Positions 1,646-25,288 of a DNA stretch of 64,000 nt are shown here, one piece after another. Numbering within the stretch: position 1 is the first letter of the stretch; every line of letters starts with the position of its first letter. The DNA comes from Ylistrum balloti. Its lineage: Eukaryota. A program made the position numbers and the translations under genes. The DNA lies in the NCBI RefSeq assembly GCF_031769215.1, contig NW_026782064.1:1426001-1490000 (forward strand), written 5' to 3'. The notes beneath the pieces were generated by a model. The model saw only the letters and a program-made list of their open reading frames with translations. It was not told the origin of the DNA and made no database searches.

Positions 1646-1666
1646 AAAGAAAGTTATAAGTCATGT

Positions 1667-2483: not shown

Positions 2484-2847
2484 TATTTTGGTCTTGATGT
2501 AATATTATAATCAAAACACAAACAGAATTTTTCATTGTAGTTAGAAATATGATATAGACCTGTTAAAAATGGTGACATTAATATATACATACTTCTACAT
2601 TGTACTTCTGTGAAATATCATTAGGTGAATACTGAATACCAGCAGTGTTGTCTTTTTTATCACATCACCTGATCATGAGACAGTCTTGTTTGACATATTA
2701 TCATTACCTTGAGTTCATCAAAAGGATATCATTGTGTGTAACATCTGGGAGAAAATGAGCCTTCATTATAACAAATTGTATGACAAGGGAGAGCTGGAAA
2801 AAAATGATAAAATGTATCGTTTTTAAATCATTTAATTCTTTTTACAG

Positions 2848-2913
2848 GAGAAGTCATATAAAATTCCACAAGTGCATAAAGGGGGAATAAGCACATTTGT
2901 ACCAGAAAGGGAG
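2848..2913 (+). CDS. SESN: Sestrin upstream internal coding exon (distal-promoter isoform), EKSYKIPQVHKGGISTFVPERE
   Basis: Acceptor TTTTTACAG ends 2847, donor GTAAGT at 2914, 66 nt, phase 0/0. Aligns residue for residue with the recalled human SESN1 segment [22 protein letters not shown] and is in frame with exon 18997. Confidence 0.8.
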
Positions 2914-4169: not shown

Positions 4170-5542
4170 GTGAGAGTGACACAGTATTCACACTGGCCAC
4201 CTTTAGTGTGCGAGAGTGACACAGTCCTCACTCGGGCCACCTTTAGTGTGCGAGAGTGACACAGTCCTCACACGGGCTACCTTTAGTGTGCGAGAGTGAC
4301 ACAGTCCTCACACGGGCTACCTTTAGTGTGCGAGAGTGACACAGTCCTCACACGGGCTACATTTAGTGTGCGAGAGTGACACAGTCCTCACACGGGCTAC
4401 CTTTAGTGTGTGAGAGTGACACAGTCCTCACACGGGCTACCTTTAGTGTGTGAGAGTGACACAGTCCTCACACGGGCTACATTTAGTGTGCGAGAGTGAC
4501 ACAGTCCTCACACGGGCCACCTTTAGTGTGCGAGAGTGACACAGTCCTCACACGGGCCACCTTTAGTGTGTGAGAGTGACACAGTCCTTACACGGGCCAC
4601 CTTTAGTGTGTGAGAGTGACACAGTCCTTACACCAGCCACCTTTAGTGTGCGAGAGTGACACAGTCCTCACACGGGCCACCTTTAGTGTGTGAGAGTGAC
4701 ACAGTATTCACACGGGCTACCTTTAGTGTGTGAGAGTGACACAGTCCTTACACGGGCCACCTTTAGTGTGCGAGAGTGACACAGTCCTCACACGGGCCAC
4801 CTTTAGTGTGCGAGAGTAACACAGTCCTCACACCGGCCATATTTAGTGTGCAAGAGTGACACAGTCCTCACACCGGCCACCTTTATTGTGTGAGAGTGAC
4901 ACAGTCCTTACACCGGCCACCTTTAGTGTGTGAGAGTGACACAGTCCTCACACGGGCCACCTTTAGTGTGCGAGAGTGACACAGTCCTCACACGGGCCAC
5001 CTTTAGTGTGCGAGAGTGACACAGTCCTCACACGGGCCACCTTTAGTGTGCGAGAGTGACACAGTCCTCACACGGGCCACCTTTAGTGTGCGAGAGTAAC
5101 ACAGTCCTCACACCGGCCATATTTAGTGTGCAAGAGTGACACAGTCCTCACACCGGCCACCTTTAATGTGTGAGAGTGACACAGTCCTCACACGGGCCAC
5201 CTTTAGTGTGTGACACAGTACACGGGCCACCTGACACATCCGCCACCAGACTATGGTCAATGATTAGTCATTAAATTGGTGCAGGTGTTATTATAACCAC
5301 CTTTTAGTGTGCGAGAGTGACACAGTCCTCACACAGGCCACCTTTAGTGTGCGAGAGTAACACAGTCCTCACACCGGCCATATTTAGTGTGCGAGAGTGA
5401 CACAGTCCTCACAAGGGCCACCTTTAATGTGCGAGAGTAACACAGTCCTCACACCGGCCATATTTAGTGTGCAAGAGTGACACAGTCCTCACACCGGCCA
5501 CCTTTAATGTGCGAGAGTAACACAGTCCTCACATGGGCCACC
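4170..5542. repeat. 40-bp minisatellite, about 30 copies with one interruption
   Basis: Unit CTTTAGTGTGCGAGAGTGACACAGTCCTCACACGGGCCAC; interrupted at about 5231-5300 by non-repeat sequence. Confidence 0.95.
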
Positions 5543-6947: not shown

Positions 6948-7570
6948 TGCATAAAAGTAGATAAAGTTAATATAAGACAATAGATCTTTATAAAAGTAAA
7001 TAAAGTTAATATTAGACAACAGATCTTTATAAAAGTAAATAAAGTTAATATAAGACAATAGATCTTTATAAAAGTAAATAAAGTTAATATAAGACAATAG
7101 ATCTTTATAAAAGTAAATAAAGTTAATATTAGACAATAGATCTTTATAAAAGTAAATAAAGTTAATATAAGACAATAGATCTTTTTAAAAGTAGATAAAG
7201 TTAATATTAGACAATAGATCTTTATAAAAGTAGATAAAGTTAATATAAGACAATAGATCTTTATAAAAGTAAATAAAGTTAATATTAGACAATAGATCTT
7301 TATAAAAGTAAATAAAGTTAATATAAGACAATAGATCTTTATAAAAGTAAATAAAGTTAATATTAGACAATAGATCTTTATAAAAGTAGATAAAGTTAAT
7401 ATAAGACAATAGATCTTTATAAAAGTAGATAAAGTTAATATAAGACAATAGATCTTTATAAAAGTAAATAAAGCTAATATTAGACAATAGATCTTTATAA
7501 AAGTAAATAAAGCTAATATTAGACATTAGATCTTTATAAAAGTAGATAAAGTTAATGTAAGACAATAGGT
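6948..7570. repeat. 39-bp AT-rich minisatellite, about 16 copies
   Basis: Unit AAAGTAAATAAAGTTAATATAAGACAATAGATCTTTATA; explains the 13-aa-repeat minus-strand ORFs 6930-7175 and 7185-7565. Confidence 0.95.
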
Positions 7571-10414
7571 CTTATTTAATAAAACAATAGGTACCTAATG
7601 TGATGGAAACCATTTTTTATATCACTTCAAATTTTTGTGTTGAAATGGTCTGTGAGAGCCATACTACATTATTATCACATGTAAACCACAAATGGTAGAC
7701 TTATGTCACAAGTATCTCTTTATGCAGAGATCATTAATCATGATTTTATTAAGGAATGCAAAATTTGATAGTAAAACTTGTAGATCTTATGGCATTTGTT
7801 TGAGACCTTAAGACACAAATTATACATCAGTCATGATATAGCCATGGACTTTGAATATTTTAAGTCCTTGATATATCACAGTCAAAGCCATAGAAGGATT
7901 TTAGCATATAGTTTTTGTGACAGTAAAAAAGCATGCAAAACACCATTTAAACCATGTGACAATGATGTAGCACAGCTCTTAAAACAGATATAAACAGATA
8001 TAATCATGGGATTCAAAAGGTGATATATACAACAGTATTTTCTAATTATTAACACATTCTTAATACATTACAGCAAGGCCAATAAGTACCCATGTGTGTG
8101 TACATCTCTAGATTAAAGTCTACTTATACGGAATTTGAAGAACATGAAGAACTTATATGGCATGTTTGAGAAGGGAGGGAGACATATTGTTTATTACTGG
8201 TTCTTCTTTTGTGCCAGGCTTACCCTCCTGTTGATACTCAGTATTGTACCTCAGGTAACTGCCAAGACCACTAGACTTTACTTGTAATTTCGTGCCTTAC
8301 AGTTTTAACTGTAGTACCTGTCTTGAGTATACAGCGTTAATATCTTTAGGTAGATAATCTCCCCACAGGTCACTTGTACCAGGTCACTCATTCAACTTAG
8401 TCTGGTCTAATTACATATAAAGAAGAACTTGTATGGAAGGGCTGAACTATTATGACTGTTGTTTAAAATGTTCTTTGCATACAATTGACCCATTGTTTGT
8501 CCGGTTTATTTGGGGTTAGAATCCACAATGGAGTACAATCTTCATTCCAGAACTATTGACACACTGACACAATATATATATCCCAGTATGTATAATTAGT
8601 TGGTCTTTGATTATGTACGAGTTGGAGACTTTCAGGTCTAGAGTGTACCATACAAGGAATGCTTACACATTGATTACACAGTCAAAATAACAGTACTAAG
8701 TAAAGATTGGTCTCCAGTGCTGGCCATTACTTAACAGATTCTATGGCGTGTAAGATCTGTACATAGGGTTTTCAATAGCTTATCTCACTAATCTGATCAA
8801 AACTTATATAAAATTATAAACAAGGTTCTTAGGAATTGAACTCTGACTTGAGTTTTCTGCATAGTTTGGTCTTGTAGATAGTGTGTTTTTCTATATCTAG
8901 TTAAAATGAAGACTATTTTGATAGTCCCAAATGACTTGAACTCTTAACATTTATCTCTTAATCCTTTATGTAACATGCTTGGTTACCCTGTATAGATATT
9001 CGAAGTTCAAGACAGTACAGTGAGAGTTTTAATATCACTTTCTTTAAGCATTTTCTTTGGTTAAAAATATACACAGCTCTTGGTATTAACTTTATTATAG
9101 AGATGTTAGAAATTAAAGACAGCACAGTGAGAGTTTTATTATCATGCTCTGTAACCAAGCTCTACTCACCAATATGGTTGATATTTAAATAACAGAATGT
9201 TTTATTTGATAAAATCAATGTTTTCAAAGCCACCTGTTATTATCAGTATATGGAATTAGAAATTACATGTATTTAGGTTGAACACTGTTCCAAGAGATAA
9301 TTACTTTAAGAGAGATCTTTGCTTCTTATACAAAATCTGAACTGATTAATGTTTTCCCTGGGCAACATGACAGTTCACTTTGTTAACTAAATAGCTTCTC
9401 CATTAAAATTGCAGAAATTCGTACATTTTTAATTGTAGCTGTTTTACTTATGACGACTTCATGAACATTAGATATTTTTATTATATTTCCAATTCTCCTA
9501 AAAGCTTAAATGTGTTTTCCATCAATTTAGATACATTTGACACTTTGATATTATTATATAACACAGCTATATGTCTTAAGTCTTGTCACAGGAAACACCA
9601 GACCATGATTACACTACCTCTTGGCAACTGATTTCATTTTTGACAGAATTGTGGATCACTGGGTGTATTTGATTAGTTGTACTTGTGCCTGATAGTTGGA
9701 AACAGGGTATGATTAGTTCACATGACATTCAACCTGCTTGAGACTGATAGTGATGAATCAGCCAGTTTTCGTTGACTGGCCATAACTGCATGGATTGGGA
9801 TTTGGTCTGGTCGCTCACTATTTCTCATCGATGAAATATGAGGGGCCTTTTGTGGAATTTTCTTGTAAATCGTCCAGATTTAACAACTGCATCTTAAGAA
9901 TAAATGAAAATGCTGCAGCTGCTACCTGTCCATGATTTTTTGGGTTGAAATTTTGGGTCATAAAAGAAGGTCTTTGGTAATTACATGGCAGAGACTTGCT
10001 CAAATAGAGTCTGCCATGTACCGTACCTTACACAAACTTAGATTCAAAAATATAGCCTGCAAGTAGTAACTTTAAAATTGGAGACGATAAGTTCTAGACT
10101 GAAGCTTACTGTCATGCTCTAATACCTACAAAAATAAGCATTAAATTCTGGTCACATTCAGAGCAGAACAGAACACCACATTAGAATTAATGGACAGTTA
10201 AACATATAGATTATGACACTGAAACTGTTGGTGTATTGCAGACATCAGTACTTCAAGACATGGACTAGTTGTGCATTGATGAATTGAGAACTAGTTCACA
10301 CTTTAAGTAAATATAACAACAACTTAACACATGCAGACCTGCAACAATCACATGAAACCTCTGAGTGACTAAATTAATAGCTGCTAGTTGGTTTTACGTT
10401 GCCTAATAAGATAT

Positions 10415-11142
10415 AACGTAATATTACCACCAGTGCCTAATAACAGATATACCATAATATTACCACCAGTGCCTAATAACAGATATACCATAATATTACC
10501 ACAGGTGCCTAATAACAGATATACCATAATATTACCACAAGTTCCTAATAACAGATATACCATAATATTACCACATGTGCCTAATTACAGATATACCATA
10601 ATATTACCACCAGTGCCTAATAACAGATATACCATAATATTACCACCAGTGCCTAATAACAGATATACCATAATATTACCACATGTGCCTAATTACAGAT
10701 ATACCATAATATTACCACCAGTGCCTAATAACAGATATACCATAATATTACCACAGGTGCCTAATAACAGATATACCATAATATTACCACAAGTTCCTAA
10801 TAACAGATATACCATAATATTACCACATGTGCCTAATTACAGATATACCATAATATTACCACCAGTGCCTAATAACAGATATACCATAATATTACCACCA
10901 GTGCCTAATAACAGATATACCATAATATTACCACCAGTGCCTAATAACAGATATACCATAATATTACCACCAGTGCCTAATAACAGATATACCATAATAT
11001 TACCACCAGTGCCTAATAACAGATATACCATAATATTACCACAGGTGCCTAATTACAGATATACCATAATATTACCACCAGTGCCTAATAACAGATATAC
11101 CATAATATTACCACAGGTGCCTAATAACAGATATACCATAAT
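10415..11142. repeat. 36-bp minisatellite, about 20 copies
   Basis: Unit CCATAATATTACCACCAGTGCCTAATAACAGATATA; explains the 266-aa YTIILPPVPNNR ORF. Confidence 0.95.
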
Positions 11143-14100
11143 AACTGATATTGGTCAACTCTCTGGTAAGCAAATTGTGAAGGACTGATTTGACAAGTTT
11201 GAATTGCAATGGTCTGAAGGTACATTTGTTTCGAAGTGGTCATTTAAGGTGAACTATTTCCTCTCAGGCAAGAGTTTACATCACTTTTTGTGTAATAAGA
11301 ATTTCTGACAGTCATCAGTGTGTACCTGCCCCTAGCATCCTGTGTAAGAGAGTACATTTATCAGGTGTACAGGTGTATAGCTTTACCTGGCAGCACTAGT
11401 CGAACTCTTAGTCCTTCTGGACAGTGGTCAAGATATAATCACACTGCCAAAGGTGTGCATGATAACATTGGCCTGTCTCAAATGATAAAAGTCAAGAAAG
11501 TGTTCTATATCTGATAAGGTCAGGGTGTATGATTTAACAACTTACAAGCCCTTTCACACCTACAGTTAAGGGTGTAAGATCAGAATAATTCACCTTTCTT
11601 TTGTTAGAGAAAGCAGGCTGGTTATTTGGTGGAAAGCCCTGGATGAGATAGTGATATTGATAATATAGTATAGTTCAGCAGCCTTAATATTGTATTGACT
11701 GTTTCCTGGTGATCTGCTAGTTTGGGGAGGGGTCAATAAAGATATATAAATACTTTTCCTGATGAATGTTGAAAATTGAAAATCAAGATTTCATGATGCC
11801 TTCATGCATAACATTAAGTTGATCATAAGTTTCAAATTATCACCCCACCAGTTACTGAAAACTGAAAATTAACTTTTATGTACTTCTACTTCATATTCCA
11901 GAATTGGAATATAAGTACTAGAAGTAGAACAGTGAGAAGTGTTGAAAGGAGTGGGATAAGGTCTTTCTTTTATCATGTTGTAATGTATATCATTGGCAGA
12001 CTTGATTTATCTTTGTCTAAATTTTGAGTTCATTTGCCCTCATCTTAATTACCTGACAGTTGTTCAGATAGCCAAGTTGGACGTCACTTATAATCTGCAT
12101 ACACAGACAGGATGTCAATTATTAATACCCATTGATTTACCTAACAGTATAATGCCCAGAAAATGATACTTTGTCTTAGGCTATTAAAGAGGGTGGAGAA
12201 AGGTATGATATTGGTTCTAAGTCAGGGTGTTAGCATGAACGTTTCTAGATTAAATTTTCCAGTACATATGTCACTCAGTTCATTGTCCATTAATTAATTC
12301 CCAGACAACAATGAACATGGCCATACTGTGGTGAGTTAGCAGAGATTTAAGGAAACATGGTAGATTATTATCAGGCCTGATCAAAAACTAATCAATATTA
12401 TTTATATAACTAGTTTTATTGTATCATGAGATATACTACCCTTTATTTGAGGTAAGATATCACTGGTAGCAAATTTGATGACAGGATCATAAAATATGCC
12501 ATTTGGTCAAAGACAATAGTGATATGTGCTGTTAAGTAACATATAGGATAACCAATGATTATGGAACTTGTTTTATTAATAAATAACCTAATCCAATGCT
12601 GTTTGGATTGATATTCTTCCCTTGTTTTAATTAAGTTACTTTGGAGTTCAAATCTGTATCTGGCCCTATTTGAATTTTCATATAAATGCAAATTTAGATA
12701 AGGAGAATTTGAAGGTCAAGGTGAAATTATATGAAGGAGTAAGACATGTATCTGAAAGAGAATATGATGTGAAGGGAAATATATACCTACAATTGTCACA
12801 AATGCAAGTCCGGTGATTACCATACAAATACTCTTTCACTGCTGTGGTCATTCACATTCACTCTAGGTCACTTATATGACCAGTTAGATGACCATTCAGG
12901 CCTTTGATGTGGCCTGAAGAATAGAGATTGACATGACTTTATGATCCTATTCTCCTGGTTACCATGATGTATTGTGGCAGATCTGATGTAAATCAGAGTC
13001 CTCAGAGTGTTTGACAAGATAATCATGGTCTTTGCATGCTTTTGCAGGTCGCCAGCACGTGTGATGTGGATGTATATGATGTTTAGGTGTGGGTGGTGTA
13101 ACACACATGTAGTGGTATATTTATGGCTCATTCATTATAAGATAACGGTAAAATGAGAAAAAGAAAAGAAAAAAAAGTGTTGTTGTGAGATGTCATAGTT
13201 CAGTAGTTCATGTTCATTTTGTGTTCTTCACTGGGGAAAAAATACTCCCCTTATCCTATGTATGGTCTTGGTCTTATCAAAGCATTAATTACCTTGATGT
13301 GACCTGTGGGTGTTAATGTGAAAACAGACCATTACCATTGTTTGTCCTTATTTTGCTGGCAAGAAAATGATCACCAGATAATGTAATGTAACACCTCTAC
13401 ATCAAACTCTGTACGTTCATGATCTCCACTGATTCAACAAAAAATTGTATCATTCACGAATGTTCACTAAGCTTCTGCACTATATCTAAATGAAGTCATG
13501 AAAGAAAAAGTATCGATAAAAATCTTCAAAAACCTCTCAAATTTAAGTACCATAAAAAGTTTAAAAGCCAGTGCTATATATAATTACTCTCATTATATAC
13601 AACTTTATAGTCAGAAATACATTGTTTTTAAGCCACTACTATTTGATGGTGAGGGGAATGAAGTGTTTCCCTGGGCTGTCATTCGGTCATAATTTTGTTC
13701 CCACTGATATATACACTTTACCAGACCTAGATACAGATCTCCTGATTGGATAGACAGTTGTATAATACACAGGTAAAAATATACATGTCAAGTCTGATTT
13801 GGCAATTCCCTTTTTCCAGAGTTACAGCCATTAAACTTTGAGAATTTGAATTGAAATTTTCACAAAACATCAAGACCAATAATGGAGAACCTTGTCTAGC
13901 TTCAGAGGGAATTTAAAAGGCAAAGAATTGAAGACAATTTTAGCGGGACTTCAGTTTTATTTCTTGAGTCCTGAGTAGACAAAAACAAGTAGAAAAAAAA
14001 TTTAAAGTTCAGAATATTGTCTCTCTGTTTGAAAGAATAAATATAATTAATTAATGTACAAGATGGAATATTGTGAGAGCTGTATTTGTGTGGAACTACT

Positions 14101-15000: not shown

Positions 15001-17892
15001 GTTAACAATATATAATATCAACAGGATTTTATTATTGAATGTGCTTGCAATACAGTAGCATCACCAAAATTGTATTTTAAAGAGAATCCTGGAGACAAAA
15101 AAGATTGCTGGGCAATGGTGATTTTAGTGAGCCCTTAAACACAGAACTATTCCAACATCATTCTCATTCATCAAGACAGTTACAGCATAGAGATGGCCCC
15201 CAGTTGATCAATGCTGGTCAGCTTCAGAAATATTCCCAACAAGACAAATTTCACTGTTATTCTATCAAAAAGACTTTATTTGAGGGGGGTGTATTTTTTT
15301 CTATCAAAATCAAGCATTGAAACTGACTTATAGTAAAAAATTGTCTACTAAAGACAAACAGTTTCCCTTTGTTAGTTGTTAACTTGACCAACCCCGTGAG
15401 TTTTCTATAAAAACACTCAATGGACACCATCATTCTCACAGCAATGAACGGAAACAGACATGTCTCTATTGATTCTTAGAATAGCCAGTTTTTCATTAGC
15501 AGTCCTTTCTTCTTGTTTATCATATTGATTTCTTCTTTCCATTAATCTAGCTGACTGGCTGTTCTAGAGGTCATCTAGATGGGTGTGATGGTTACAAAAG
15601 CAGGCCAATCAAACTGTTCAGGTTGCTAGGTGCATATAGAAAGGGGGTATAAGGGCACACCACTCCGAGATTCTGAAGAGAGATGGACCTACATAGAAAT
15701 GATAGTCCCTGGGATGATCTATAGAGACCTTTATTGTGTTTATAATGAAAATATGGGAACAGGGCCTAACTACTGAGAGAAATTACTCCATGATTCATAA
15801 TGATAACCCCTAAAATGGATAGACAGTTTTGTTGCTATGGTGTTAATGTGTGTCTGAATCATTAGTGATCATGCAATGTGTTTGGAAATTTCCATAGACT
15901 GTATTTCATACATTTGTTGGATTGTGATAAAAAACTGTGCAATCTGATCTTAAGTTAATGAAGGTAATCAAGCTTAAGGCTTATACACACACACACAGAC
16001 ACACACACATATATTTATATATAGAGAGAGGGGTGGGGGAGAGAGAGCTAAGGTCAGGGTTATCAAAGTCAAAATTAGGTAAAAATTATCAGGCTCAAGG
16101 TAAGACTTTAAAATGTTTATGTTTTCTACTACTCAAAAGTTTCAGGTAAAGAAATCTATGTCATAATCATCCTTTTTATCATCAAGAAATTGCAAGATGT
16201 ATTAGTGAGAAAAGTGATAAGATAAGGAGATATTCAGCTTTATGACGGTTGATATAATTTCAAATTTACTGCATTACCTTGTGTTTAGCTCAAATATTAC
16301 AGAAAAACAATCATTATATTTGTATTCATAAAAATTTTCTCAGAGTTACTTTGTAATGTAACTAAAAATACATGTGAGAAGTTTGTTAACTTCTATTGTC
16401 AAATATATATTCACACTTATACATTCAACAGAGTGTAGTGATCGTATATAAATATTAAAATTGGATCCAACTTAGTACGTTCTGCAGGAGTGGTTCAGTG
16501 ATAATCACATTGAAAATCTACAAAGTTATTGAAATCATTGGTATTGTATGGATCAAACCATTCAACTCCCTAAACATTGTGACAATATTGAATTACTTTT
16601 GGTGTAGTAAATGAAATTTTAAATTCTATGTATAATCATAATGGCTGTTTTGACACCTGGTTACAAAACTGTAAACATGTAAAAGAATATATACTTTTTT
16701 GATTGACCAGTGTTGCGTGTATACCTACCATAACTTTTTAAAAGTAACATGCAAACATTGAGCTTCACTGCTGTAACATGACAATGTTATGATTTTGTTA
16801 TAAATATTGTATTGGTAAAGTTCACGCATTACAGGCTGTTATAGAACGGATGAAGCTTGGGTAGCAGGAGGCTGCTGTGTATCATATCACAAGGCATTAA
16901 AGTCACTTATAACTGAACCTTGATGCCAACAAACTACCTTGTCTTTAAGTAAGATTCTGCTTAAATAATGAATATTAGTTAAGAAATATTAGTTTATTCA
17001 AGTAAGTTTAATTTTAAATTATACTTGAATTTAAAAGTATTAAACAACATAAACGATGATTCCAAGCATTTGTCGTTTTAGAAGTATAAAACATGTTTTC
17101 TAAGAGTCCCTATAACATACCATTTTATTGTTGTATTTTGTTTTAATTATTTCATTTCATGCTTATGCTGATTTGTTTGTGCGAGGCCAGTGACAAAAGC
17201 TTACCAAGTCAGACAATAACAAGTACCTTCGTGAAACAACTTGTGTTTCTGTGTGCATTTTGTAGATTTTCTTATATAAATGTAAGACTTGTTTTGATGA
17301 ATAATGTTCATGTCGCCTTATTAAAACTAAAGCAAAGTAAATGGTGCGTGGTCACGTTGTTGATCATAGCTGATATTCAGGTGAAGGTCGTTTGGAACAC
17401 ACCCCCGTTTTCCACCAATGAAATATCACCTTTGGGCAAACCCATTTTTTAACCAATCAACGTCGTGCTTTGAACATCAGCTGTTCGTAGACAAACACGC
17501 GTTTTTTAAAACGTGATACTGTCGATTAGAATAATCGAGATATTTTGAAAATTATTTTCAAATCACATTTTTTGGAGTAGATAGATAATGTTTCTTAGTC
17601 AACAACTAAATGACAAACGACTGAATTATGAATTAGAACACAATCTTTTCGAATTCAGTTTAATTTTGAGACAGCCCCAGTTTCATGCACTTTATTTATA
17701 GATATGAACTTGGTAGTGTCCGTTATAGCGATGGAAAATATCTGATGAATTGTTCATTTTGGTATTTAATATGGTATGATCTCCATCAAATTTGTATTGA
17801 ATTGAGTTGTTTTATAAGTGCTGTTAGAAACAATTTGCCGTCAAGCTGTGTATAAGAAATTTTAATTGACGAACCGGCGTTTATCTGTCCGT

Positions 17893-17954
17893 GGAAAAAT
17901 CCCATTCGTCGTGTCAATCAATTGGGCACGTGACTTTAGATGAAATGTGATTGG
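17893..17954 (+). promoter_or_regulatory. Proximal (internal) sestrin promoter motif cluster
   Basis: GGAAAAATCCC (Rel/NF-kB-like) 17893-17903, ATTGG (reverse CCAAT) at 17921 and 17950, CACGTGAC E-box 17927-17934. Lies in a CpG-retaining patch about 170 bp upstream of ATG 18121. Confidence 0.55.
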
Positions 17955-18120
17955 TTGTTAGAAGAAGCTCCTCCCGATGACTTCATCTTGCATGTATTAG
18001 CATACATTGACTGAGTTACTAGCCGCTACCTCAGCTGTTCAGAGTAACGAGTAGAGTTATAACGGAGAGGTTGTGTTGCACACTGAGGGAAATGTTTATT
18101 ATGTAAAACCCTGTTCGGTG

Positions 18121-18276
18121 ATGTTGGATTTTGCAAATACTTCAAACTCGTTGGAGCTTAAAGCTGCAGATTTGGATAAGATAAACGGAAACAATAATAG
18201 TGCATCTGTTATCTTGAGTTGTCAAATGTGCGATATTGCACCTAGAAAGGATGGACAAACAGTTCAAGCGGAAAAG
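18121..18276 (+). CDS. SESN: Sestrin alternative first coding exon (52 aa, MLDFANTS...SCQMCDIAPRKDGQTVQAEK)
   Basis: ATG at 18121, open to the donor GAAAAG|GTAG at 18277 (phase 0). Joined to the downstream exons it gives a 483-aa sestrin, the usual family size. Confidence 0.7.
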
Positions 18277-18768
18277 GTAGCGTTTTATATATTTACTTTG
18301 AGGAAAGCATGATTTTGTTATTATTAATTAATATATCACTGTAGCAATGAAGTATGAAATAAACAGAAATGTTTAGTCTTGAAGATATTATTCTTTTCAC
18401 GTTATTCTCGTTGCACTTGTCTTTGCACTTTGTAGAACGAAAAATTGCAGCAAAGTCATAAAGTATTTTCCATAATTTTGCTGTCAGATCATTCTTATTA
18501 TTATCATGGCAATGCTTACGCTGTTGTTGTTTGTAAGTTACCAAATTGTGTTTGCTGAAAGTTGGTGATGATTGATACCCTAGAAATGCATCCGACCAGG
18601 GCTTGTATTTTGGTTTTGAAATGTTCCCTCTGTAAAAGATACTATCCGTTAGGTGTCGCTTCTATCTTCGCAAGGTCAGCTGGAAAAATCAGCTGTTTAT
18701 GAACTAGACAAAGGAGCGTCAATCTTACTTGACAGGACTTGAAATTTGACAGTTAAGATAGACAAAAG

Positions 18769-18813
18769 ATGGTTATGAAAAACTCTATAGATGTTCCTAA
18801 GTTGCAGCAAGCA
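18769..18813 (+). CDS. SESN: Candidate second alternative first coding exon (MVMKNSIDVPKLQQA)
   Basis: ATG at 18769, open for 15 codons to a consensus GTAAGT donor at 18814, phase 0 and compatible with acceptor 18997. Confidence 0.4.
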
Positions 18814-18996
18814 GTAAGTTTATTTTATGTTTCACATATGTCAACATTTGGCTAATGTAATTAATATTGAAATTGCTTCTCTAAGAAAGTTTCCGACCAC
18901 AGGGAGGAGAAAATGAAGATGACAGCTTCCTCTTATCTTATTCAGTTTTGTGCAGAATCGTTAGGTATTTACGTATGCATTCCTTTTATTTTGCAG

Positions 18997-19026
18997 ATAA
19001 TACCAGCAAGCTCAAAAGATACAGAG
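18997..19026 (+). CDS. SESN: Sestrin 30-nt micro-exon IIPASSKDTE
   Basis: Acceptor TTTTGCAG ends 18996, donor GTATGT at 19027, phase 0/0. Matches the segment after FIPEKE in vertebrate sestrins (ILQVGSEDAQ / VVQANTVDER, recalled). Confidence 0.8.
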
Positions 19027-20496
19027 GTATGTATGTAAATTCTGTTAATTTGTGGGATTGATCAGGAATGTTGAGTTACTAAAATAATACTAAAAAAGAA
19101 CAGGAATCGGACGTTCTGTATGTGAAATAAAGTTACTGTGCTTCTAAAAATAATAGGAATCATATGCATAACATGATACCTGTTATTATAGTAGTATTAA
19201 AACTCAAATTCACATACAAGTAATTCCTGTGCTGAAATTAATACTCAGCCTCCTTTTTTACACAGTTTTAAGAAAAATTATTGTGGTCAAGAGCTCTAAA
19301 CCTTGCAGTTGGAACAATTTGGGAAAGCTGACAGAAAATTTTTGGAATGCTAACATAATTTCGATTTTGAGCAATTTCTGAATATTTATTTACGTGCTTT
19401 TTTAAACTCCTAACCCAATATAAGGATTGAGTTGCTGTATCTCAGAAATATAAAGGATACTGAACTTTATTTCCTGCATAGCCAATTGCAATTAAGTATG
19501 ACTTAAATCGTAGCAAAAAAAATTTGATTTGGATGTTGCAAATTTTGGAGGCTGAGAGATTAGATTTTCACAACTTTTTCAGTCAAAAAATATTTTCTTA
19601 TTGTCCTTTTCATTATTAAAATGGCAGAAATATTAGGGAATAAGTATATAAACTAGCTTTATATTACTATAAAAGGCATTACCAATAAAATTATCATCTT
19701 ATTTCAAAAGAAATTTGAAATGATCAGAGTATCTTAACATTAAGCTCACTTGTTAGAAATTACCCATTTTTCATTTAAAAAAAAGCTTCATACATTTGCT
19801 AAGCACCTTTTTGTGTCGAGGTTTGAACAAAAACTTGCAGTGAAAAGTGCAAAGTCAATGTAAAGTGAAATAGGAGTGCTTTCAGATTAAAAATTCAATG
19901 GGAAGTGAAATTGTTTGGCCTGTGACTGCATTGCTGTAAACAAGATGATGAAATATTTGTATAAAAAACCAGTCATGCTTGAAAAGTCGCACAGGAAGAA
20001 ATATAACAAGTAGTTCCTTTTTTGTACCATAGGATAGGCTATAGACTGACGACACTAGTGGCATGATGCAATATATTCCTATGTCTTGTGTACATACATA
20101 CAAACAACAGGGTCTGCTCTGTGCTGATGCAATAGTAGTGTTGGTAGATATACAGTGTAGTGTAGGCTAACAACCAGTTCATTAGCACTGCCTTGGTTGA
20201 AGTAAGGATATGGACGTCTGTGGTAGTGTACTTTACTGTAGTTGTTAGTGATATGTAAACAGTGGACAGGTTATTTTATTTGAAAGAAGTGTTTTAAAAT
20301 GACACAGTTGGAACATTTACTGAAAATATTAGGTGTGAAATATTCAGAGAAAATGGGATTGCCTAAACTTATGGAGGTAAATATTGTATATTTTCAAACA
20401 AATTTTCACCTGATCATCATCTTGAATTGAACGAGCTATATTAACATACAAGATTTTATTACTTTAATCACAAAACATTTACTTTTTGTCTTTTAG

Positions 20497-20667
20497 ACAC
20501 AGGCCCTGTTTGTGGATGCTTTCCTACAGAATAACCGGCTGGATCATGTCGTTCAGCTCATGGGTTATCATCCACAATACTTAGAATGTTTTCTGAGGAC
20601 ACAACAGTATCTGATGAAAGGAGATGGGGCCCTACCATTCCATTATCGGCATTACATTGCGATCATG
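20497..20667 (+). CDS. SESN: Sestrin exon TQALFVDAF...RHYIAIM
   Basis: TTTTAG acceptor, GTATGT donor, 171 nt; contains the hallmark [32 protein letters not shown]. Confidence 0.95.
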
Positions 20668-20932
20668 GTATGTTATCAAACATCAACAGCTTTCTTTTTA
20701 GTGTTTTTTGGTAAAAATCAAATATATGTAAAGAAAATTACAAACTGGTACAAAATATTAATAGATGTGGTCATTTAATTTGTAGTTTTGGTTTTGAAAA
20801 ATGTAATTGATAGATTTTTTTTAATTTGGTAAAAAGAAAGATTTGTTGTTGCATATATTTTCAGAAAGTATTGTAAGATTTTGTTTCTGCTCTTTCTCAG
20901 ACATTAAATTTTTTTTCTTTTTCAATTTACAG

Positions 20933-21115
20933 GCTGCCAGCAGGCACATGTGTACCTATCTGGTTCATCTCCATGAACAGGAATTCATTCTGCAAGGTGG
21001 AGATCCCGAATGGTTGAAGGGAACAAGCCATGTTCCCAAAAAACTAAGGGATTTGAATGAACTCAACAAATTACTGGCACATCGGCCTTGGTTGATATGC
21101 AAGTCACATATTGAG
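20933..21115 (+). CDS. SESN: Sestrin exon AASRHMCTYLVHLH...LAHRPWLICKSHIE
   Basis: TTTACAG acceptor, GTATGT donor, 183 nt; carries the catalytic Cys, Tyr and His equivalent to SESN2 C125/Y127/H132. Confidence 0.97.
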
Positions 21116-21379
21116 GTATGTATTAGTGTACAGCTGTCTCTTGACCACATAACATCCATCATTAAACTTGTCCATGGTTATAACAAGTTCTATCTGGTTT
21201 AAATGTTCTGATGAAAGCGAAAAAAATAAATTGAAGGTGAATAATTTGTTAATTATAGTAGAATAAATATTTCAGGATGATATCCATAATTTATGATAGA
21301 TTTGTTACTATGAGAACTGAACATTTTGCACTTTATAATTAAGAAAGTTAACTGATTAAGAATTATACTTGATTTTCAG

Positions 21380-21607
21380 AAACTCGCAAGATCAACCAAC
21401 TCCAAAGACAATTGGTCTATAAGTGAATTGGTGCAAGCTTTGATTCTCATGGCACACTTCCATTCACTTTGTTCCTTTGTTTATGGGTGTGGGATCAAAT
21501 CCGAGATTGACCACAATGGTGGTTACACTTACAGACCTCAGTCCCCTGTAGAGAAAAATGCCAATGATTTTGATTCCTCAGACAGTTCTTCCACAAATGG
21601 GGATATC
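21380..21607 (+). CDS. SESN: Sestrin exon KLARSTNSKDNWSISELVQ...NGDI
   Basis: TTTTCAG acceptor, GTAAGT donor, 228 nt; contains the NWSxxELVQA..HFHSLCSFVYGCGI motif. Confidence 0.96.
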
Positions 21608-21804
21608 GTAAGTATGATTTGTCAAACTGAATACCATTTAATATTAATCCTACCAAACATTTTCTTCTAAGAAAGGACACTATCCAAATGAAAGTGGAAC
21701 TTTGATAAGTTATTAGAATATGAAATATTACAGAGTTTACATAATGGAATAGCTAATTTCATGATTTAACAAAGTTTTCATTCATGGATGGTTGTTTGCT
21801 TTAG

Positions 21805-21937
21805 AATTCTGAACCTGAAGTTGGTATAGAAGTTCTTATGGAAAGAATGAAGAAATTAGTTGAAGAAGGTGAAGAGGAAACAACGCAAGAGGAAAGAGTT
21901 AAAAGATTTGAGAAGGTGGAAAGTCAGAGTGTTGAAA
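21805..21937 (+). CDS. SESN: Sestrin exon NSEPEVGIEVLMERMKKL...RFEKVESQSVE
   Basis: TTTAG acceptor, GTAAGT donor at 21938, 133 nt ending in phase 1; matches the sestrin linker EALMERMKxL..EExSQEE...RFE. Too short for the ORF track. Confidence 0.92.
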
Positions 21938-22299
21938 GTAAGTACTGTAGTGTGTAATTGATAATGATTAGATGTCAGAGCAGTGATTGATAAAACATTA
22001 GCTATAACATTATTGATCATCTCTGTAGTGTGCTGTGTGACAGTGATCCTGTCCTATTGATATGTGTCTTACATCCATGCATTGATTAATTCTGAAAGTC
22101 ATGGTACTGCAAACAACTTTTGTATAATCCTCCTTACAAAGCTTCTCCAAACTTAAGATGATGTAGCTGTTCAGTATCAACAGCATTTCTCCTATTACAG
22201 GTTTTTATTACAAGTTGTACCATGATGTACCCACAGACACTTCTGATGGGACAAAATACAAATTAAATATTACATTGGTGACTGTTTCTTTTTACTCAG

Positions 22300-22537
22300 T
22301 TGCTGCTAACACTGTGCGGCCATCACCAAAGGCTGAAGTCTTGAAATATGTTGATGAAGCTGAATACTGTTACCAAGATTTCGCCAAACGAGACTCTGTT
22401 GAAGACATACCTACCTTTAGAGCTACTGATTACAGTTGGGAAGATCATGGGTTCTCATTATCCAATAGATTGTATATGGACATTGGTAATCACTTAGAGG
22501 ACAAATTCTCCGTAGCAACCAACATGACTTACTACAC
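22300..22537 (+). CDS. SESN: Sestrin exon IAANTVRP...PTFRATDYSWEDHGFSL...NMTYY
   Basis: TTTACTCAG acceptor, GTAAGT donor at 22538, 238 nt, phase 1 to 2. Confidence 0.96.
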
Positions 22538-22692
22538 GTAAGTATATCTATTCATTCTTTTTTATTTTCCATGTAAAAAAAAGTTGAATTAAATTAATGT
22601 CCTCATAAAAACCTCACTTACATGACACTATTAAAGCATGTTTGAAAATTTGTATGGATTAAATTTTGACACAACTATTGATGCATTTACAG

Positions 22693-22918
22693 AATGGGAG
22701 AAATACGTGATGTGGACACCACTGCATTCCGTCGCGCTATCTGGAGTTACATTCACTGTTTATATGGTATCATGCATGATGATTACAACTACGGTCAGGT
22801 GAATCAGCTGCTAGAAAGAAATCTGAAGGCTTACATAAAGACAATGACGTGTTATCCAGAAAGATTGACTCGCAAAGATTACGATAATGTCATGAGGGAA
22901 TTTAAACATTCAGAAAAG
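22693..22918 (+). CDS. SESN: Sestrin exon [18 protein letters not shown]...HDDYNYG...FKHSEK
   Basis: TTTACAG acceptor, GTAAGT donor at 22919, 226 nt, phase 2 to 0; contains the GATOR2-binding DD motif and leucine-pocket residues. Confidence 0.97.
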
Positions 22919-23127
22919 GTAAGTGTAGTTCTAGAAATGCTTTTTTATTTGAGTGTTCTAAAACTTTCATGGTAGTTTTAAAATGTTCACAACTGAATTA
23001 ATACAAAAAAGCTATAGAGGGTAATGTAAATAGATTACATCAGAGTATCTGTTTCATTTGTTTAACTTGATCATGTAATTTATTTCTGATTTCAAAGAAA
23101 GATACATTTTTTTTTCTCATTTCACAG

Positions 23128-23214
23128 GTGCATGTGAATCTGATGTTGCTAGAGGCACGGTTTCAGGCAGAACTCCTATATGCATTGAGGGGTGTGATGC
23201 AATTTATGACGTGA
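23128..23214 (+). CDS. SESN: Sestrin last coding exon VHVNLMLLEARFQAELLYALRGVMQFMT*
   Basis: TTCACAG acceptor, TGA at 23212-23214; canonical sestrin C-terminus VHVNLLLxEARMQAELLYALRAIT. Confidence 0.97.
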   Translation: MHVNLMLLEARFQAELLYALRGVMQFMT

Positions 23215-24893
23215 TGTAAAGACTTTTTTCAGAACTAAAACAACAGAAAAGTGTGGTGAGAGGCAATCCTCATTGAAGTACTGTGATTGGATATGGATAA
23301 GCAATTAACCTTCTTTGGTTGCAGAAAGCCTTTCCTGATTGAACGAAGACTGATAGTGGTGCATGCACTACTGGTGATGCATCAAGTAGTTCAGTTCAAT
23401 GTGTCTGTGATAATGTCTTTCATTTTAACAAAATAAAAAACTTATGGTGGCGAGATTTATGGACATCAACTACTAAATATCTGTGACATAATAGTTGTGG
23501 GATGTATGAATACATTGTAAATGTGTTTTATGTTGTGTTAGAAAGTAGTCCATTGTTTTAAAAGCAGTAGATGAGATCTACTTGTTGTGATTAGAACAGA
23601 GAGTTGAGAACGATTTACACAGTTTCTGTGTATGGTGAGAAAGAGGAGGAAGATAGCGTTGACAGATCATATCTGTAGTGAACAAGTTCATTATGTATTC
23701 ATATAAACATGTTGGATGTGCAATTTATAGACTGAGAGAGATGCTATAAGCATCAATCCAAGGAGATTATAGAGTTATAAGGAACCCTTGTCATGACTTA
23801 CATATGGTTGCACAAATGGGGGTTCTGGTGAGTAAACACCCAGAGTGTGGCCAAAATGTGGTGAGCCATTTCGGGCAAGAACTCCAAATGTCTTTCAATA
23901 GGTGCTGCAGACCTAAGTTACATTGTAAACTGCTTAAAGCTATACTCATTTTGTTATATATATATATAATACTTTGATTACTTTCATAGTCTCCACATTG
24001 TCTTATTTCTATACAAATCACTGTTTATCAAGACACTTCTGAAAACCAAAGTCTCCTATAATTGTTGACAGCATTACTGGTAACTGTAGGTTACTGTTAT
24101 GGTGCAAGTTTGTTTGTTTCCTAACAATACATTCCACAGTGTTGTGTGAATTATCCTGCCTCGTACAAATAATGTTTCCTAGTCATGTTGACATTTCTGT
24201 GTATCTGTCCTTGGCTGAGTATGTCACTTTATGCAATATTCAAGTGTACCATAGCTATATATTGGTGAAACGACACCAAGATTTTATCTAAATTTGAAAA
24301 GAGTTTAGCGAGACCTGATTGAACAAAAAATTAAGTTTTGAAATTTATTATAAGTTCCCCCTAAGCTTCCCATCACTGTTGATGATCTGGCTGTTCAGTT
24401 CTTCAGGAGATGGACGTGTCCCAGAAAAGCAGCCAATTCACTGACCTCACAAGTTTATCTTGGGAGTGTAGTCAGGATTGATATGGTAGACTTGTGAAAA
24501 CGGGTACAATAAGTTTTTTTAAATATTTATTTCAAAATCAAAATATTAAACTTTTTCCAAAACCTAGAGGTTAGTCAAAAGACGTAGTGCTACAATCAAA
24601 AATACAAAATTTGTGTTGTATTTAGATTTTCTTCATTTGATGTGCTGTGTTGTTACAAATACAGCTGTGTTTTCCAGGTTCTTAACACACATTATTCTTA
24701 ATAGCTGCTGATAAGTGATATAGTTAATGATATAGGGCAAACAAATGTAAATAAGCATATATGTGTATAAGGTCTCATTTTACATACATACCAATATGTA
24801 GTTATGTCTGTTATATATAATACATGGCTTGCCTTGTAACTTGTTAGTATTATTTATATAAATATTATAGATAGTGTTTAAAACCTCCAACTT

Positions 24894-25288
24894 ACCAAAA
24901 CCTGAGTGGGTATCCCAAGATCAGGTTGGATGGGTTACCTAAACCTGAGTGGGTATCCCAAGATCAGGTTGGGTTACTAACATCTGAGTGATTGTCCAAA
25001 GATCAGGTTGGGTTACCAAAACCTGAGTGGGTATCCCAAGATCAGGTTGGGTTTCCCAATACCAGGTCGGGTTACCAAAACCTGAGTGGGTATCCCAAGA
25101 TCAGGTTGGGTTTCCCAATACCAGGTCGGGTTACCAAAACCTGAGTGGGTATCCCTAGATCAGGTTGGGTTACCAAATCCTGAGTGGGTATCCCAAGATC
25201 AGGTCGGGTTACCAAAACCTGAGTGGGTATCCCAAGATCAGGTCGGGTTACCAAAACCTGAGTGGGTATCCCAATACCAGGTTTGGTT
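24894..25288. repeat. 39-bp self-complementary minisatellite with 21-bp variant units
   Basis: Unit ACCAAAACCTGAGTGGGTATCCCAAGATCAGGTTGGGTT; AACCTGA/TCAGGTT and TGGG/CCCA are inverted pairs. Confidence 0.9.

What the first reader, a model, noticed from the sequence alone, without database searches (positions are those of the whole stretch)
18121..18276. CxxC-xxxx-RKD first exon sits downstream of the exon it precedes in vertebrates
The exon ends ILSCQMCDIAPRKD, with the same CxxCxxxxRKD spacing as the recalled human SESN3 N-terminus (LLCTNCRKVLRKD); SESN1 also has LLGCKQC. In vertebrates this motif is followed by the GPSxFIPEKE segment. Here that segment (2848-2913) lies 15 kb upstream, so the two cannot be joined in vertebrate order by collinear splicing. 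An in-frame TAG at 18052 argues against use as an internal exon. This points to a first-exon duplication or reshuffle giving mutually exclusive N-termini: a CxxC isoform lacking the FxPExE segment and a distal isoform that has it. I know of no described function for this CxxC, which could be a redox or metal-binding module. This is the best candidate for new biology in the window.
Basis: partly seen in the sequence, partly recalled or inferred. Interest (0 to 1): 0.75.

Follow-up and report, generated by a model that had tools for sequence, protein, structure and literature searches.

The report
Scallop sestrin alternative first exon
This stretch is the first coding exon of an already annotated alternative-promoter isoform of a scallop sestrin gene; its cysteine pair (CxxC) is conserved in bivalves, but the "RKD" likeness to human SESN3 is chance.

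Summary
Window 18121-18276 (+) is an ATG-initiated, 52-codon exon with a phase-0 GT donor and an in-frame TAG at 18052. The GGISTFVPERE exon lies 15 kb upstream at 2848-2913.

Joined to micro-exon 18997-19026 and seven further exons, it gives a 483-aa sestrin. That protein is residue-for-residue identical to RefSeq XP_060067423.1, sestrin-1-like isoform X2 of the scallop Ylistrum balloti.

Spliced RNA contigs whose protein matches Argopecten irradians X2 are colinear with 17659-18279. They then jump to the micro-exon and the next exon, so this is a true first exon with a 5'UTR of at least about 460 nt.

Scallops have at least five alternative N-termini. The window holds three alternative first exons (18121, 18769, 20299) plus the shared internal exon at 2848.

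CQMC is invariant in four scallops, and a CxxC recurs in the matching exon of mussels, an oyster and an ark clam. It also recurs in a venerid clam, a chiton, a brachiopod and annelids. "RKD" is not conserved (IKD, LKD, IED).

I found no evidence for exon duplication. AlphaFold2 predicts the exon-encoded tail to be disordered.

Verdict: ordinary alternative-promoter architecture, already annotated. The one small new point is a conserved CxxC of unknown function.

The parts
2848..2913 (+). Internal coding exon (EKSYKIPQVHKGGISTFVPERE), the GPSxF[IV]PxxE segment. It is used by the long isoform (X1) and, in other scallops, by a short isoform that starts just upstream of it.
   Evidence: AG/GT, 66 nt, phase 0. 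tblastn shows 76% identity to residues 100-124 of Pecten and Mizuhopecten X1. The exons for X1 residues 1-99 are not in the window.
17659..18120 (+). 5'UTR part of the alternative first exon. This is the minimum extent; the promoter lies upstream, and CCAAT boxes occur at about 17414 and 17452.
   Evidence: Transcript contig L001 positions 24-648 align colinearly to 17659-18279 at 73% identity. L002 aligns from 18062. CCAAT boxes were read from the sequence. The transcription start site is not mapped.
18121..18276 (+). Coding part of the alternative first exon of sestrin-1-like isoform X2 (52 aa).
   Evidence: ATG, in-frame TAG at 18052, GT donor in phase 0. The assembled 483-aa protein is identical to P0276 = XP_060067423.1. 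dN/dS is 0.29 against the Argopecten-type transcript.
18220..18231 (+). CQMC (Cys34, Cys37), the conserved core of the exon.
   Evidence: Invariant in Ylistrum, Pecten, Mizuhopecten and Argopecten. A CxxC is present in the matching exon of Mytilus, Saccostrea, Tegillarca, Ruditapes, Liolophura and Lingula.
18769..18813 (+). Coding part of a further alternative first exon (MVMKNSIDVPKLQQA), which would join 18997.
   Evidence: tblastn to the Pecten X4 N-terminus, E=1e-6. ATG and |gtaagt donor in phase 0.
18997..19026 (+). Shared 30-nt micro-exon (IIPASSKDTE). It is the acceptor for the exons at 2848, 18121 and 18769.
   Evidence: AG/GT, phase 0. It is present in all the scallop isoforms that carry these N-termini.
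20299..20376 (+). Coding part of the alternative first exon of isoform X3 (MTQLEHLL...LME), which joins 20497 directly.
   Evidence: 100% tblastn match. The assembled 447-aa protein is identical to P0274 = XP_060067424.1.
20497..23214 (+). Seven common coding exons: 20497-20667, 20933-21115, 21380-21607, 21805-21937, 22300-22537, 22693-22918 and 23128-23214 (including the stop). They encode the PA26/sestrin domain.
   Evidence: All have AG/GT boundaries and the frame closes. Pfam PA26 covers residues 49-482, E=6.5e-187. PDB SESN2 5dj4 matches. The transcript contigs match exon by exon.

Best explanation
The window carries the sestrin gene of the saucer scallop Ylistrum balloti. 18121-18276 is the coding end of one of several alternative first exons, each with its own promoter inside the long 5' introns.

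Shown:
- Transcription that starts upstream of about 17659 gives an mRNA whose first exon (5'UTR plus 52 codons) splices at 18276 to the 30-nt micro-exon 18997-19026. It then joins the seven common exons and yields the 483-aa isoform X2.
- Because this exon lies 15 kb downstream of the GGISTFVPERE exon (2848-2913), X2 necessarily lacks that segment.
- The long isoform X1 starts upstream of the window. It passes through 2848-2913 and joins the same micro-exon.
- Two more first exons (18769-18813 and 20299-20376) give still shorter N-termini.

Inferred:
- The 52-aa N-terminus is a fast-evolving, probably disordered tail placed in front of the conserved sestrin core. Its only strongly constrained element is a hydrophobic-CxxC core (VIL-x-CQMCD-x-AP).
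- I think this tail is most likely a regulatory or targeting tag rather than a folded domain. The cysteine pair could be a site of S-acylation or a redox-sensitive dithiol.
- The choice of promoter sets which N-terminus the stress-response protein carries.
For: Identity:
- The assembled CDS equals XP_060067423.1 (Ylistrum balloti X2) exactly. The X3 assembly equals XP_060067424.1.

Transcripts:
- Logan RNA contigs L001 and L002 come from two runs. Their protein, after 16 extra N-terminal residues, is identical to Argopecten irradians X2.
- They are colinear with 17659-18279. They then continue in the micro-exon and 20497-20667, and so on through the last exon and 3'UTR.

Isoform repertoire:
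- X1 to X5 in four scallops show five mutually exclusive N-termini.

Coding constraint:
- The frame is kept in four species, including a 3-codon indel.
- dN/dS is 0.29 in exon 1 against 0.009 in the rest of the gene.

Orthologous exons:
- They share the M-x-D-[FL] start, the INGN and VIL motifs and the CxxC in mussels, an oyster and an ark clam. All of these isoforms lack GPSxF.

CxxC enrichment:
- 11 of 61 non-redundant short N-termini carry CxxC, against 2.7+-1.5 in shuffles.
- With bivalves collapsed to one lineage it is 6 of 57 against 2.1, P about 0.013.
- Other Cys spacings are not enriched.

Disorder and domains:
- AlphaFold2 gives pLDDT below 50 for residues 1-57 while the core is confident.
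- No Pfam family matches the exon.

Precedent:
- Human SESN1 has three transcript variants of about 48, 55 and 68 kDa (PMC8721191, Table 1).
Against: - No RNA data for Ylistrum itself could be found. The only run holding the stretch is genomic DNA. Expression in this species therefore rests on the RefSeq model and on orthologues.
- The transcription start site is not mapped.
- The 15-kb order of exons rests on this assembly alone. The independent contigs cover only 17500-23400, and the intervening intron holds several tandem-repeat arrays.
- The functional reading of the CxxC (acylation or redox) is inference from motif context only.
- The AlphaFold2 alignment was shallow (40 sequences), so low confidence does not prove disorder.
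- No p53-type response element is enriched near the exon, so nothing is shown about how the promoter is regulated.
Confidence: 0.9

Rival explanations
1. The CxxC exon is the displaced or duplicated counterpart of the vertebrate SESN3/SESN1 first exon (CxxC...RKD followed by GPSxFIPEKE). It was moved downstream of the FxPExE exon by a first-exon duplication or reshuffle in molluscs.
For: - Vertebrate-type N-termini returned by the search do carry CxxC, a basic tract and then GPSAFIPEKE in one protein (P0074, P0115).
- CxxC spacing is specifically enriched in short sestrin N-termini of several phyla.
- MAFFT stacks all the CxxC pairs in one block.
- Ylistrum against P0074 gives z=2.8.
Against: - RKD is IKD, LKD and IED in the other scallops.
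- The CxxC exons of Pecten, Argopecten, Mytilus, Saccostrea and Lingula score z about 0 against vertebrate N-termini.
- The tail of the CxxC exon scores no better than shuffles against a 35-sequence GPSxF profile (z between -0.8 and 0.4 in scallops; vertebrate control z=10.7). No remnant of a duplicated FxPExE segment is therefore seen.
- There is no second CxxC exon in the window.
- The CxxC-without-GPSxF layout is general in protostomes (bivalves, chiton, brachiopod, annelids, one insect). If the motifs are homologous at all, vertebrates may be the derived state.
- Other scallops already have a separate short first exon that feeds into the FxPExE exon, MNRFCRKIR....
Confidence: 0.08
2. The CxxC N-terminus is an ancient bilaterian sestrin isoform module with a specific biochemical role. 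Candidate roles are a dual-cysteine S-acylation site for membrane or lysosome tethering, a redox-sensitive dithiol, or half of an intermolecular metal site. It would be shared by descent with SESN1-T2 and SESN3.
For: - CxxC is enriched with the right spacing.
- It is invariant in four scallops inside an exon that is otherwise only about 70% conserved.
- It sits at the extreme N-terminus (MCxxC) in a chiton, a brachiopod and a venerid clam.
- It is often preceded by hydrophobic residues and followed by basic ones: annelid-like MCVTCQKKRRRR, Mytilus CGMCNRNK..RKKSR, vertebrate C(S/N)NC(H/Q)KVLRK.
- It lies in a region predicted to be disordered. From general knowledge, this context is typical of N-terminal S-acylation motifs such as GAP-43 and PSD-95.
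Against: - No sequence similarity beyond the two Cys links protostome and vertebrate exons.
- No CxxC isoform is annotated in the hemichordates, gastropods (Haliotis, Gigantopelta, heterobranchs) or most insects examined.
- With bivalves collapsed to one lineage the enrichment is only P about 0.013.
- Only two ligands are conserved, which is too few for an intramolecular zinc site.
- Full-text searches found no paper linking sestrins to a CxxC or to palmitoylation.
Confidence: 0.2
3. Assembly artefact. The 2848-2913 exon, or the block that carries it, is misplaced, and the true order is as in vertebrates.
For: - The 15-kb interval contains five large tandem-repeat arrays (3122-3562, 4161-5210, 5297-5542, 6951-7573, 10400-11143). 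Such arrays can cause assembly errors.
- No independent contig spans the interval.
Against: - The window has no N runs.
- Independent DNA contigs from another individual are colinear across 17500-23400.
- In no protostome examined does a CxxC isoform contain the GPSxF segment. That fits the CxxC exon lying downstream of it, although exon skipping could give the same proteins.
Confidence: 0.03

Closest known systems
RefSeq model XP_060067423.1, sestrin-1-like isoform X2 [Ylistrum balloti], with orthologous X2 models in Pecten maximus, Mizuhopecten yessoensis and Argopecten irradians
   Same: It is identical in sequence to the protein assembled from 18121-18276 plus the common exons. The orthologues have the same exon, the same CQMC and the same junction to IIPASSKDTE.
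   Different: Nothing differs. The database entries are automatic predictions. No publication describing the isoforms or the motif was found.
Human SESN1 (PA26) alternative transcripts T1, T2 and T3 (three variants of about 48, 55 and 68 kDa; PMC8721191 Table 1; Velasco-Miguel et al. 1999, from my own knowledge)
   Same: One sestrin gene has several promoters and first exons. These give a long N-terminal form and shorter forms on a common core. In both species, one internal promoter lies between the GPSxFIPEKE-coding exon and the next exon.
   Different: - In scallops there are at least five N-termini.
- The internal first exon here is coding and carries a CxxC. From my own knowledge, human T3 starts at an internal Met.
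- The micro-exon is separate in scallops but fused to the next exon in vertebrates (P0063 ORF fragment).
Vertebrate SESN3 / SESN1-T2 N-terminus (hydrophobic-CxxC-basic tract, then GPSAFIPEKE)
   Same: A CxxC preceded by hydrophobic residues lies near the N-terminus of a short isoform (P0074, P0115).
   Different: - In vertebrates the motif is followed in the same protein by GPSxFIPEKE. In scallops and other protostomes it never is.
- RKD and the basic tract are not conserved in scallops.
- There is no significant alignment outside the two Cys.
Short CxxC isoforms of other lophotrochozoan sestrins: Mytilus X2, Saccostrea X2, Tegillarca, Ruditapes X1, Lingula X5, Liolophura, Ridgeia
   Same: Each is an alternative first exon with CxxC, spliced to the [IV][IV]P...[DE] micro-exon and lacking GPSxF. 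Pteriomorph bivalves also share the M-x-D-[FL] start and the INGN and VIL motifs.
   Different: - The sequences are otherwise highly divergent.
- The number of extra Cys varies from 0 to 3.
- The position of the CxxC ranges from residue 2 to about residue 34.
N-terminal dual-cysteine S-acylation motifs (GAP-43 MLCCMRR, PSD-95 MDCLCIV; from my own knowledge)
   Same: Two closely spaced Cys sit in a disordered N-terminal tail, flanked by hydrophobic and often basic residues.
   Different: This is purely a resemblance in how it might work. Acylation was not tested, and in scallops the pair is 34 residues from the N-terminus.

Membership tests
Sestrin (PA26, Pfam PF04636) | Full-length match to the PA26 profile above the curated cut-off | tested here: met
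   Residues 49-482 match profile positions 7-445 of 445. E=6.5e-187, 622 bits against a cut-off of 29.4.
Sestrin (PA26, Pfam PF04636) | Sequence similarity to solved human Sestrin-2, and the conserved RH-x-C-x-YL cysteine of the AhpD-like Sesn-A domain | tested here: met
   Exon 20497-20667 matches 5dj4 residues 65-118. RHMCTYL is present, and C126 is invariant in the 40-sequence alignment. There is also a weak CMD/AhpD-family hit at residues 88-148.
Alternative first exon (own promoter) | ATG-initiated ORF closed upstream by an in-frame stop, with a donor whose phase fits the shared acceptor | tested here: met
   TAG at 18052, ATG at 18121, GT donor after 18276 in phase 0, acceptor at 18997 in phase 0.
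Alternative first exon (own promoter) | Transcripts whose 5' part is colinear with the genome upstream of the ATG and which splice to the common exons | tested here: met
   L001 and L002 meet this, but they come from a related scallop, not Ylistrum. No RNA run for this species was found.
Alternative first exon (own promoter) | Mapped transcription start site and promoter activity | not testable with these tools
   Only CCAAT boxes about 200 nt upstream of the transcript alignment were seen. The p53-element scan was at chance level.
Homologue of the vertebrate SESN3/SESN1-T2 first exon | CxxC near the N-terminus of a short isoform | tested here: met
   CQMC at residues 34-37.
Homologue of the vertebrate SESN3/SESN1-T2 first exon | Basic tract / RKD after the CxxC, conserved in orthologues | tested here: not met
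   RKD in Ylistrum only. The other scallops have IKD, LKD and IED.
Homologue of the vertebrate SESN3/SESN1-T2 first exon | Followed in the same protein by GPSxFIPxxE | tested here: not met
   Isoform X2 lacks it, and that exon lies 15 kb upstream. The tail of the exon is not GPSxF-like.
Homologue of the vertebrate SESN3/SESN1-T2 first exon | Alignment score above shuffled controls | tested here: not met
   z=2.8 and 1.5 for Ylistrum. z ranges from -0.8 to 0.8 for Pecten, Argopecten, Mytilus, Saccostrea and Lingula.
Zinc-binding cysteine module | Four conserved metal ligands in a confidently folded unit | tested here: not met
   Only two Cys are conserved in scallops, and the extra Cys or His vary between lineages. 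pLDDT is 26-33 over residues 1-50. No Pfam match.
Thioredoxin-type redox CxxC | CxxC at a helix N-terminus inside a thioredoxin-like or AhpD-like fold | tested here: not met
   The motif lies outside the folded core, in a low-confidence tail. Redox activity itself cannot be tested here.
N-terminal S-acylation motif | Experimentally acylated Cys pair that confers membrane association | not testable with these tools
   Only the sequence context fits: hydrophobic residues before, often basic residues after, disordered.

The most novel reading that the evidence does not exclude
The CxxC-bearing short N-terminus is an ancient sestrin isoform module. It would date at least to early lophotrochozoans and possibly be shared by descent with vertebrate SESN1-T2 and SESN3. 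Its cysteine pair would have a specific role, such as reversible S-acylation that tethers one sestrin isoform to membranes, or a redox switch. Vertebrates and protostomes would then differ in whether this exon is spliced in front of, or past, the GPSxFIPxxE segment.
Probability: 0.2. Interest if true: 0.5.

Novelty: already known. Interest (0 to 1): 0.22.

Why it matters
Sestrins are conserved stress and nutrient regulators that act on mTORC1, AMPK and redox pathways. Their N-terminal isoform diversity is rarely considered.

For this locus the result is mainly a clarification. The odd exon order is simply an internal alternative promoter, and the isoform is already annotated in RefSeq.

The one point that could be worth a bench test is the cysteine pair. 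It survives in an otherwise fast-evolving, probably disordered isoform-specific tail across bivalves, and recurs in other phyla and in SESN1 and SESN3. If it proved to be an acylation or redox site, it would give a mechanistic reason for isoform-specific sestrin behaviour.

Tried and rejected
- RNA evidence in the species itself. The only public run holding the stretch is genomic DNA contigs. These were colinear, with no joints and a SNP at 18133.
- Word search with the 52-aa exon alone found nothing. The length window of that tool excludes full-length proteins.
- I tested whether the tail of the CxxC exon (APRKDGQTVQAEK) is a degenerate copy of IPxxxxGGISTFVPERE, which would indicate exon duplication. 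A profile of 35 GPSxF segments with 500 shuffles gave z about 0 for all bivalves, against z=10.7 for a vertebrate control. Rejected. An hmmsearch version of the test returned no scores and was dropped.
- I tested whether the scallop T2-like first exon (MNRFCRKIR..KRRDK) is the true counterpart of the SESN3 N-terminus. z was 0.8 or less, so no support.
- A second CxxC first exon upstream in the window: none in 1-20500. The X1 N-terminal exons and the T2-like exon are not in the window.
- p53 response elements: 11 matches against 13.4 expected, none near the exon. The bacterial promoter and terminator scan was uninformative.
- Rfam found nothing in the window. Earlier findings of this scan showed nothing near this place.
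- Literature searches for a sestrin CxxC, palmitoylation or scallop sestrin found nothing relevant.
- Pfam on five larger ORFs elsewhere in the window found nothing.

Full report
**What is there**

On the + strand the window holds a complete 3' part of a sestrin gene.
- Reading the sequence gives canonical AG/GT exons at 2848-2913, 18997-19026, 20497-20667, 20933-21115, 21380-21607, 21805-21937, 22300-22537, 22693-22918 and 23128-23214.
- The flagged stretch 18121-18276 starts with ATG and is closed upstream by an in-frame TAG at 18052. It ends GAAAAG|gtagcg in phase 0.
- It encodes 52 residues that contain VILSCQMCDIAPRKD.
- Joined to the micro-exon (IIPASSKDTE) and the seven common exons, it gives an open 483-aa protein.
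- Pfam PA26 covers residues 49-482 of this protein (E=6.5e-187).
- The first large exon aligns to solved human Sestrin-2 (5dj4).

**Identity**

- A profile search returned many mollusc sestrins. The closest cluster holds RefSeq isoforms from four scallops.
- The protein assembled from the window is identical, residue for residue, to XP_060067423.1, sestrin-1-like isoform X2 of Ylistrum balloti.
- A second assembly uses 20299-20376 as first exon. It is identical to XP_060067424.1, isoform X3.

The window is therefore from this scallop, and the exon is already part of an annotated isoform.

**Is it a real first exon?**

- No RNA run for this species was available. The one run that holds the stretch is genomic DNA from another individual. 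It is colinear over 17500-23400 and has a G>A difference at 18133, which would change Ala5 to Thr.
- Two assembled RNA contigs from two public runs (L001, L002) encode a protein that is identical to Argopecten irradians X2 after 16 extra N-terminal residues.
- L001 positions 24-648 align colinearly to window 17659-18279.
- The contig then continues in the micro-exon and in 20495-20668, 20932-21115 and so on to the 3'UTR.
- Thus the introns are removed exactly where predicted, and the 5'UTR (at least about 460 nt in window coordinates) is contiguous with the coding part. Nothing is spliced on from upstream.

**The isoform set**

Scallop RefSeq models show five mutually exclusive N-termini.
- A long form of 554 aa, with a conserved LRLSVQCPFEDV helix followed by ERSYKIPRV..GGISTFVPERE.
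- A short form whose own first exon (MNRFCRKIR...) feeds into that same GGISTFVPERE exon. It is annotated in Mizuhopecten and Argopecten.
- The CxxC form, 480-483 aa.
- A 446-aa form (MI.K.CV....LQ..) that joins the micro-exon.
- A 447-450-aa form (MT.LEHLL...) that joins the TQALF exon directly.

In the window I located the shared exon (2848-2913, 76% identical to Pecten X1 residues 100-124) and the CxxC exon. I also located the fourth type (18769-18813, E=1e-6) and the fifth type (20299-20376, 100%). The long-form N-terminal exons and the MNRF exon are not in the window.

The apparent wrong order is therefore what an internal alternative promoter looks like. Human SESN1 likewise has three transcript variants (PMC8721191, Table 1). 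From my own knowledge, these come from separate promoters, one of them internal.

**How general is the layout?**

Long forms with LRLSxxCPFxDV plus GPSxF[IV]PxxE occur from insects and chelicerates to vertebrates. Short forms that skip the GPSxF segment are annotated in bivalves, gastropods, brachiopods, nemerteans, annelids, insects and hemichordates. A CxxC isoform that lacks FxPExE is thus not special to this locus.

**The motif**

Within scallops the exon reads as follows:

| Species | Sequence around the motif |
|---|---|
| Ylistrum | ...SVILSCQMCDIAPRKDGQTVQAEK |
| Pecten | ...SVILDCQMCDTAPIKDGQTVQPKK |
| Mizuhopecten | ...SVILGCQMCDTAPLKDGQTVLPKK |
| Argopecten | ...SVILDCQMCDTAPIEDGHAVQPKE |

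- CQMC is invariant and RKD is not.
- Against the Argopecten-type transcript, dN/dS is 0.29 for the exon and 0.009 for the rest of the gene. The exon is coding and under purifying selection, but about thirty times more relaxed than the core.
- Orthologous exons are recognisable in other pteriomorph bivalves by the M-x-D-[FL] start, D-x-INGN, VIL and the CxxC: Mytilus (five species, CGMC), Saccostrea (CKKCNKKAPD) and Tegillarca (CRMC).
- CxxC first exons spliced to the same micro-exon also occur in Ruditapes (MCSDC), the brachiopod Lingula (MCMVC), an annelid-like sequence (MCVTCQKKRRRR), Ridgeia (MCQWCQ) and one insect (LLCRRCQ). The chiton Liolophura also starts MCRMC, but its single annotated model does not show a recognisable micro-exon.
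- Among 61 non-redundant short N-terminal segments, 11 contain CxxC against 2.7+-1.5 in within-segment shuffles. No other Cys spacing is enriched.
- With all bivalves counted once the figures are 6 of 57 against 2.1+-1.35, P about 0.013.

It is met for the RKD.

**Link to vertebrates**

- Vertebrate-type sequences from the search do show hydrophobic-CxxC-basic tract followed by GPSAFIPEKE (P0074, P0115).
- Local alignment with shuffles gives z=2.8 only for Ylistrum, which owes it to RKD.
- z is about 0 for Pecten, Argopecten, Mytilus, Saccostrea and Lingula. The annelid-like exon scores z=3.1 against one of the two vertebrate sequences and about 1 against the other.
- I also tested whether the tail of the CxxC exon is a decayed copy of the GPSxF exon, as an exon duplication would predict. 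Against a 35-sequence profile the bivalve tails score at shuffle level, while a vertebrate control scores z=10.7.
- No second CxxC exon exists in the window.

Homology with the SESN3 N-terminus is thus neither shown nor excluded. A duplication or reshuffle has no support. If the motifs are related, the protostome arrangement is the widespread one.

**What the exon-encoded tail is likely to do**

- AlphaFold2 on a 40-sequence alignment models the sestrin core with confidence (many blocks above 85). It gives pLDDT 26-33 for residues 1-50 and below 50 up to residue 57.
- No Pfam family matches the exon.
- Only two cysteines are conserved in scallops, too few for an intramolecular zinc site. The motif also lies outside any thioredoxin- or AhpD-like fold.

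My best reading is that promoter choice attaches a short, flexible, isoform-specific tail to an unchanged sestrin core. The hydrophobic-CxxC patch is its one functional element. Candidate roles are reversible S-acylation and a redox-sensitive dithiol. S-acylation fits the context: a disordered N-terminal tail, hydrophobic residues before the pair, basic residues after it in several lineages, and MCxxC at the very N-terminus in three. This step is inference only. Full-text searches found nothing on a sestrin CxxC or on sestrin acylation.

**Caveats**

- Expression in Ylistrum itself, the transcription start site and promoter regulation are untested. The p53-type element scan was at chance level.
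- The 15-kb exon order rests on this assembly alone. The interval contains several tandem-repeat arrays, and no independent contig spans it.
- Enrichment statistics on related sequences overstate independence.

**Verdict**

The structural part of the interpretation (mutually exclusive N-termini) is right, but ordinary and already annotated. The SESN3 'RKD' match is chance, and duplication is unsupported. What remains mildly interesting is a conserved CxxC in an isoform-specific tail that recurs across phyla.

No human sequence was used.

Noticed in passing
window 18769-18813 (+): A further alternative first exon (MVMKNSIDVPKLQQA|gtaagt) lies between the CxxC exon and the micro-exon. It is orthologous to the N-terminus of Pecten X4 and Mizuhopecten X5. 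No Ylistrum isoform with it appeared among the cluster members listed.
   Followed up: partly
window 20299-20376 (+): This is the first coding exon of isoform X3 (MTQLEHLL...LME). It splices directly to 20497 and skips the micro-exon. The assembled protein equals XP_060067424.1 exactly.
   Followed up: yes
window 18133: DNA contigs of another individual (run X1) read A instead of G, which would change Ala5 to Thr in the CxxC exon. About 40 further single-base differences were seen over 5.9 kb, that is roughly 0.7% divergence.
   Followed up: no
L001 442-489 versus window 18073-18120: In the Argopecten-type transcript an upstream in-frame ATG adds 16 residues (MLCIEGDIYYVKQCSV) before the conserved MLDF start. 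In Ylistrum the same stretch has no ATG and is closed by TAG at 18052. The RefSeq Argopecten model starts at the second Met.
   Followed up: partly
window 1522-2485, 3122-3562, 4161-5542, 6951-7573, 10400-11143 (5' region and first intron); 24892-25288, 31032-31624, 37535-37935, 60609-63101, 63288-63997: There are many minisatellite arrays with periods of 22-57 nt. They include a G+C-rich 40-mer repeated about 26 times at 4161-5210, which raises local GC to 0.48. A 28-mer is repeated about 89 times at 60609-63101 and produces an 848-codon open frame on the minus strand. These were not analysed further.
   Followed up: no
window 39041-39310 (+): An ORF contains FRYIDDLL, which is reminiscent of a reverse-transcriptase YxDD box. 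Pfam gave no hit at E<=0.01, so it is unconfirmed. It is possibly a decayed retroelement.
   Followed up: partly
proteins P0271 and P0279 (Mizuhopecten X3, Argopecten X3): Other scallops have a short isoform whose basic first exon (MNRFCRKIRSLIYKRRDKF / MNRIYRKIRCLIYWRRDKF) feeds into the GGISTFVPERE exon. That is the vertebrate-like order. This exon was not found in the window, and its likeness to the SESN3 N-terminus is at chance level.
   Followed up: partly
P0372 (labelled Ancora sagittata in EukProt): A 560-aa long-form sestrin filed under a gregarine parasite clusters at 90% or more with Capitella teleta sestrin. It is probably host (annelid) contamination of that transcriptome.
   Followed up: no
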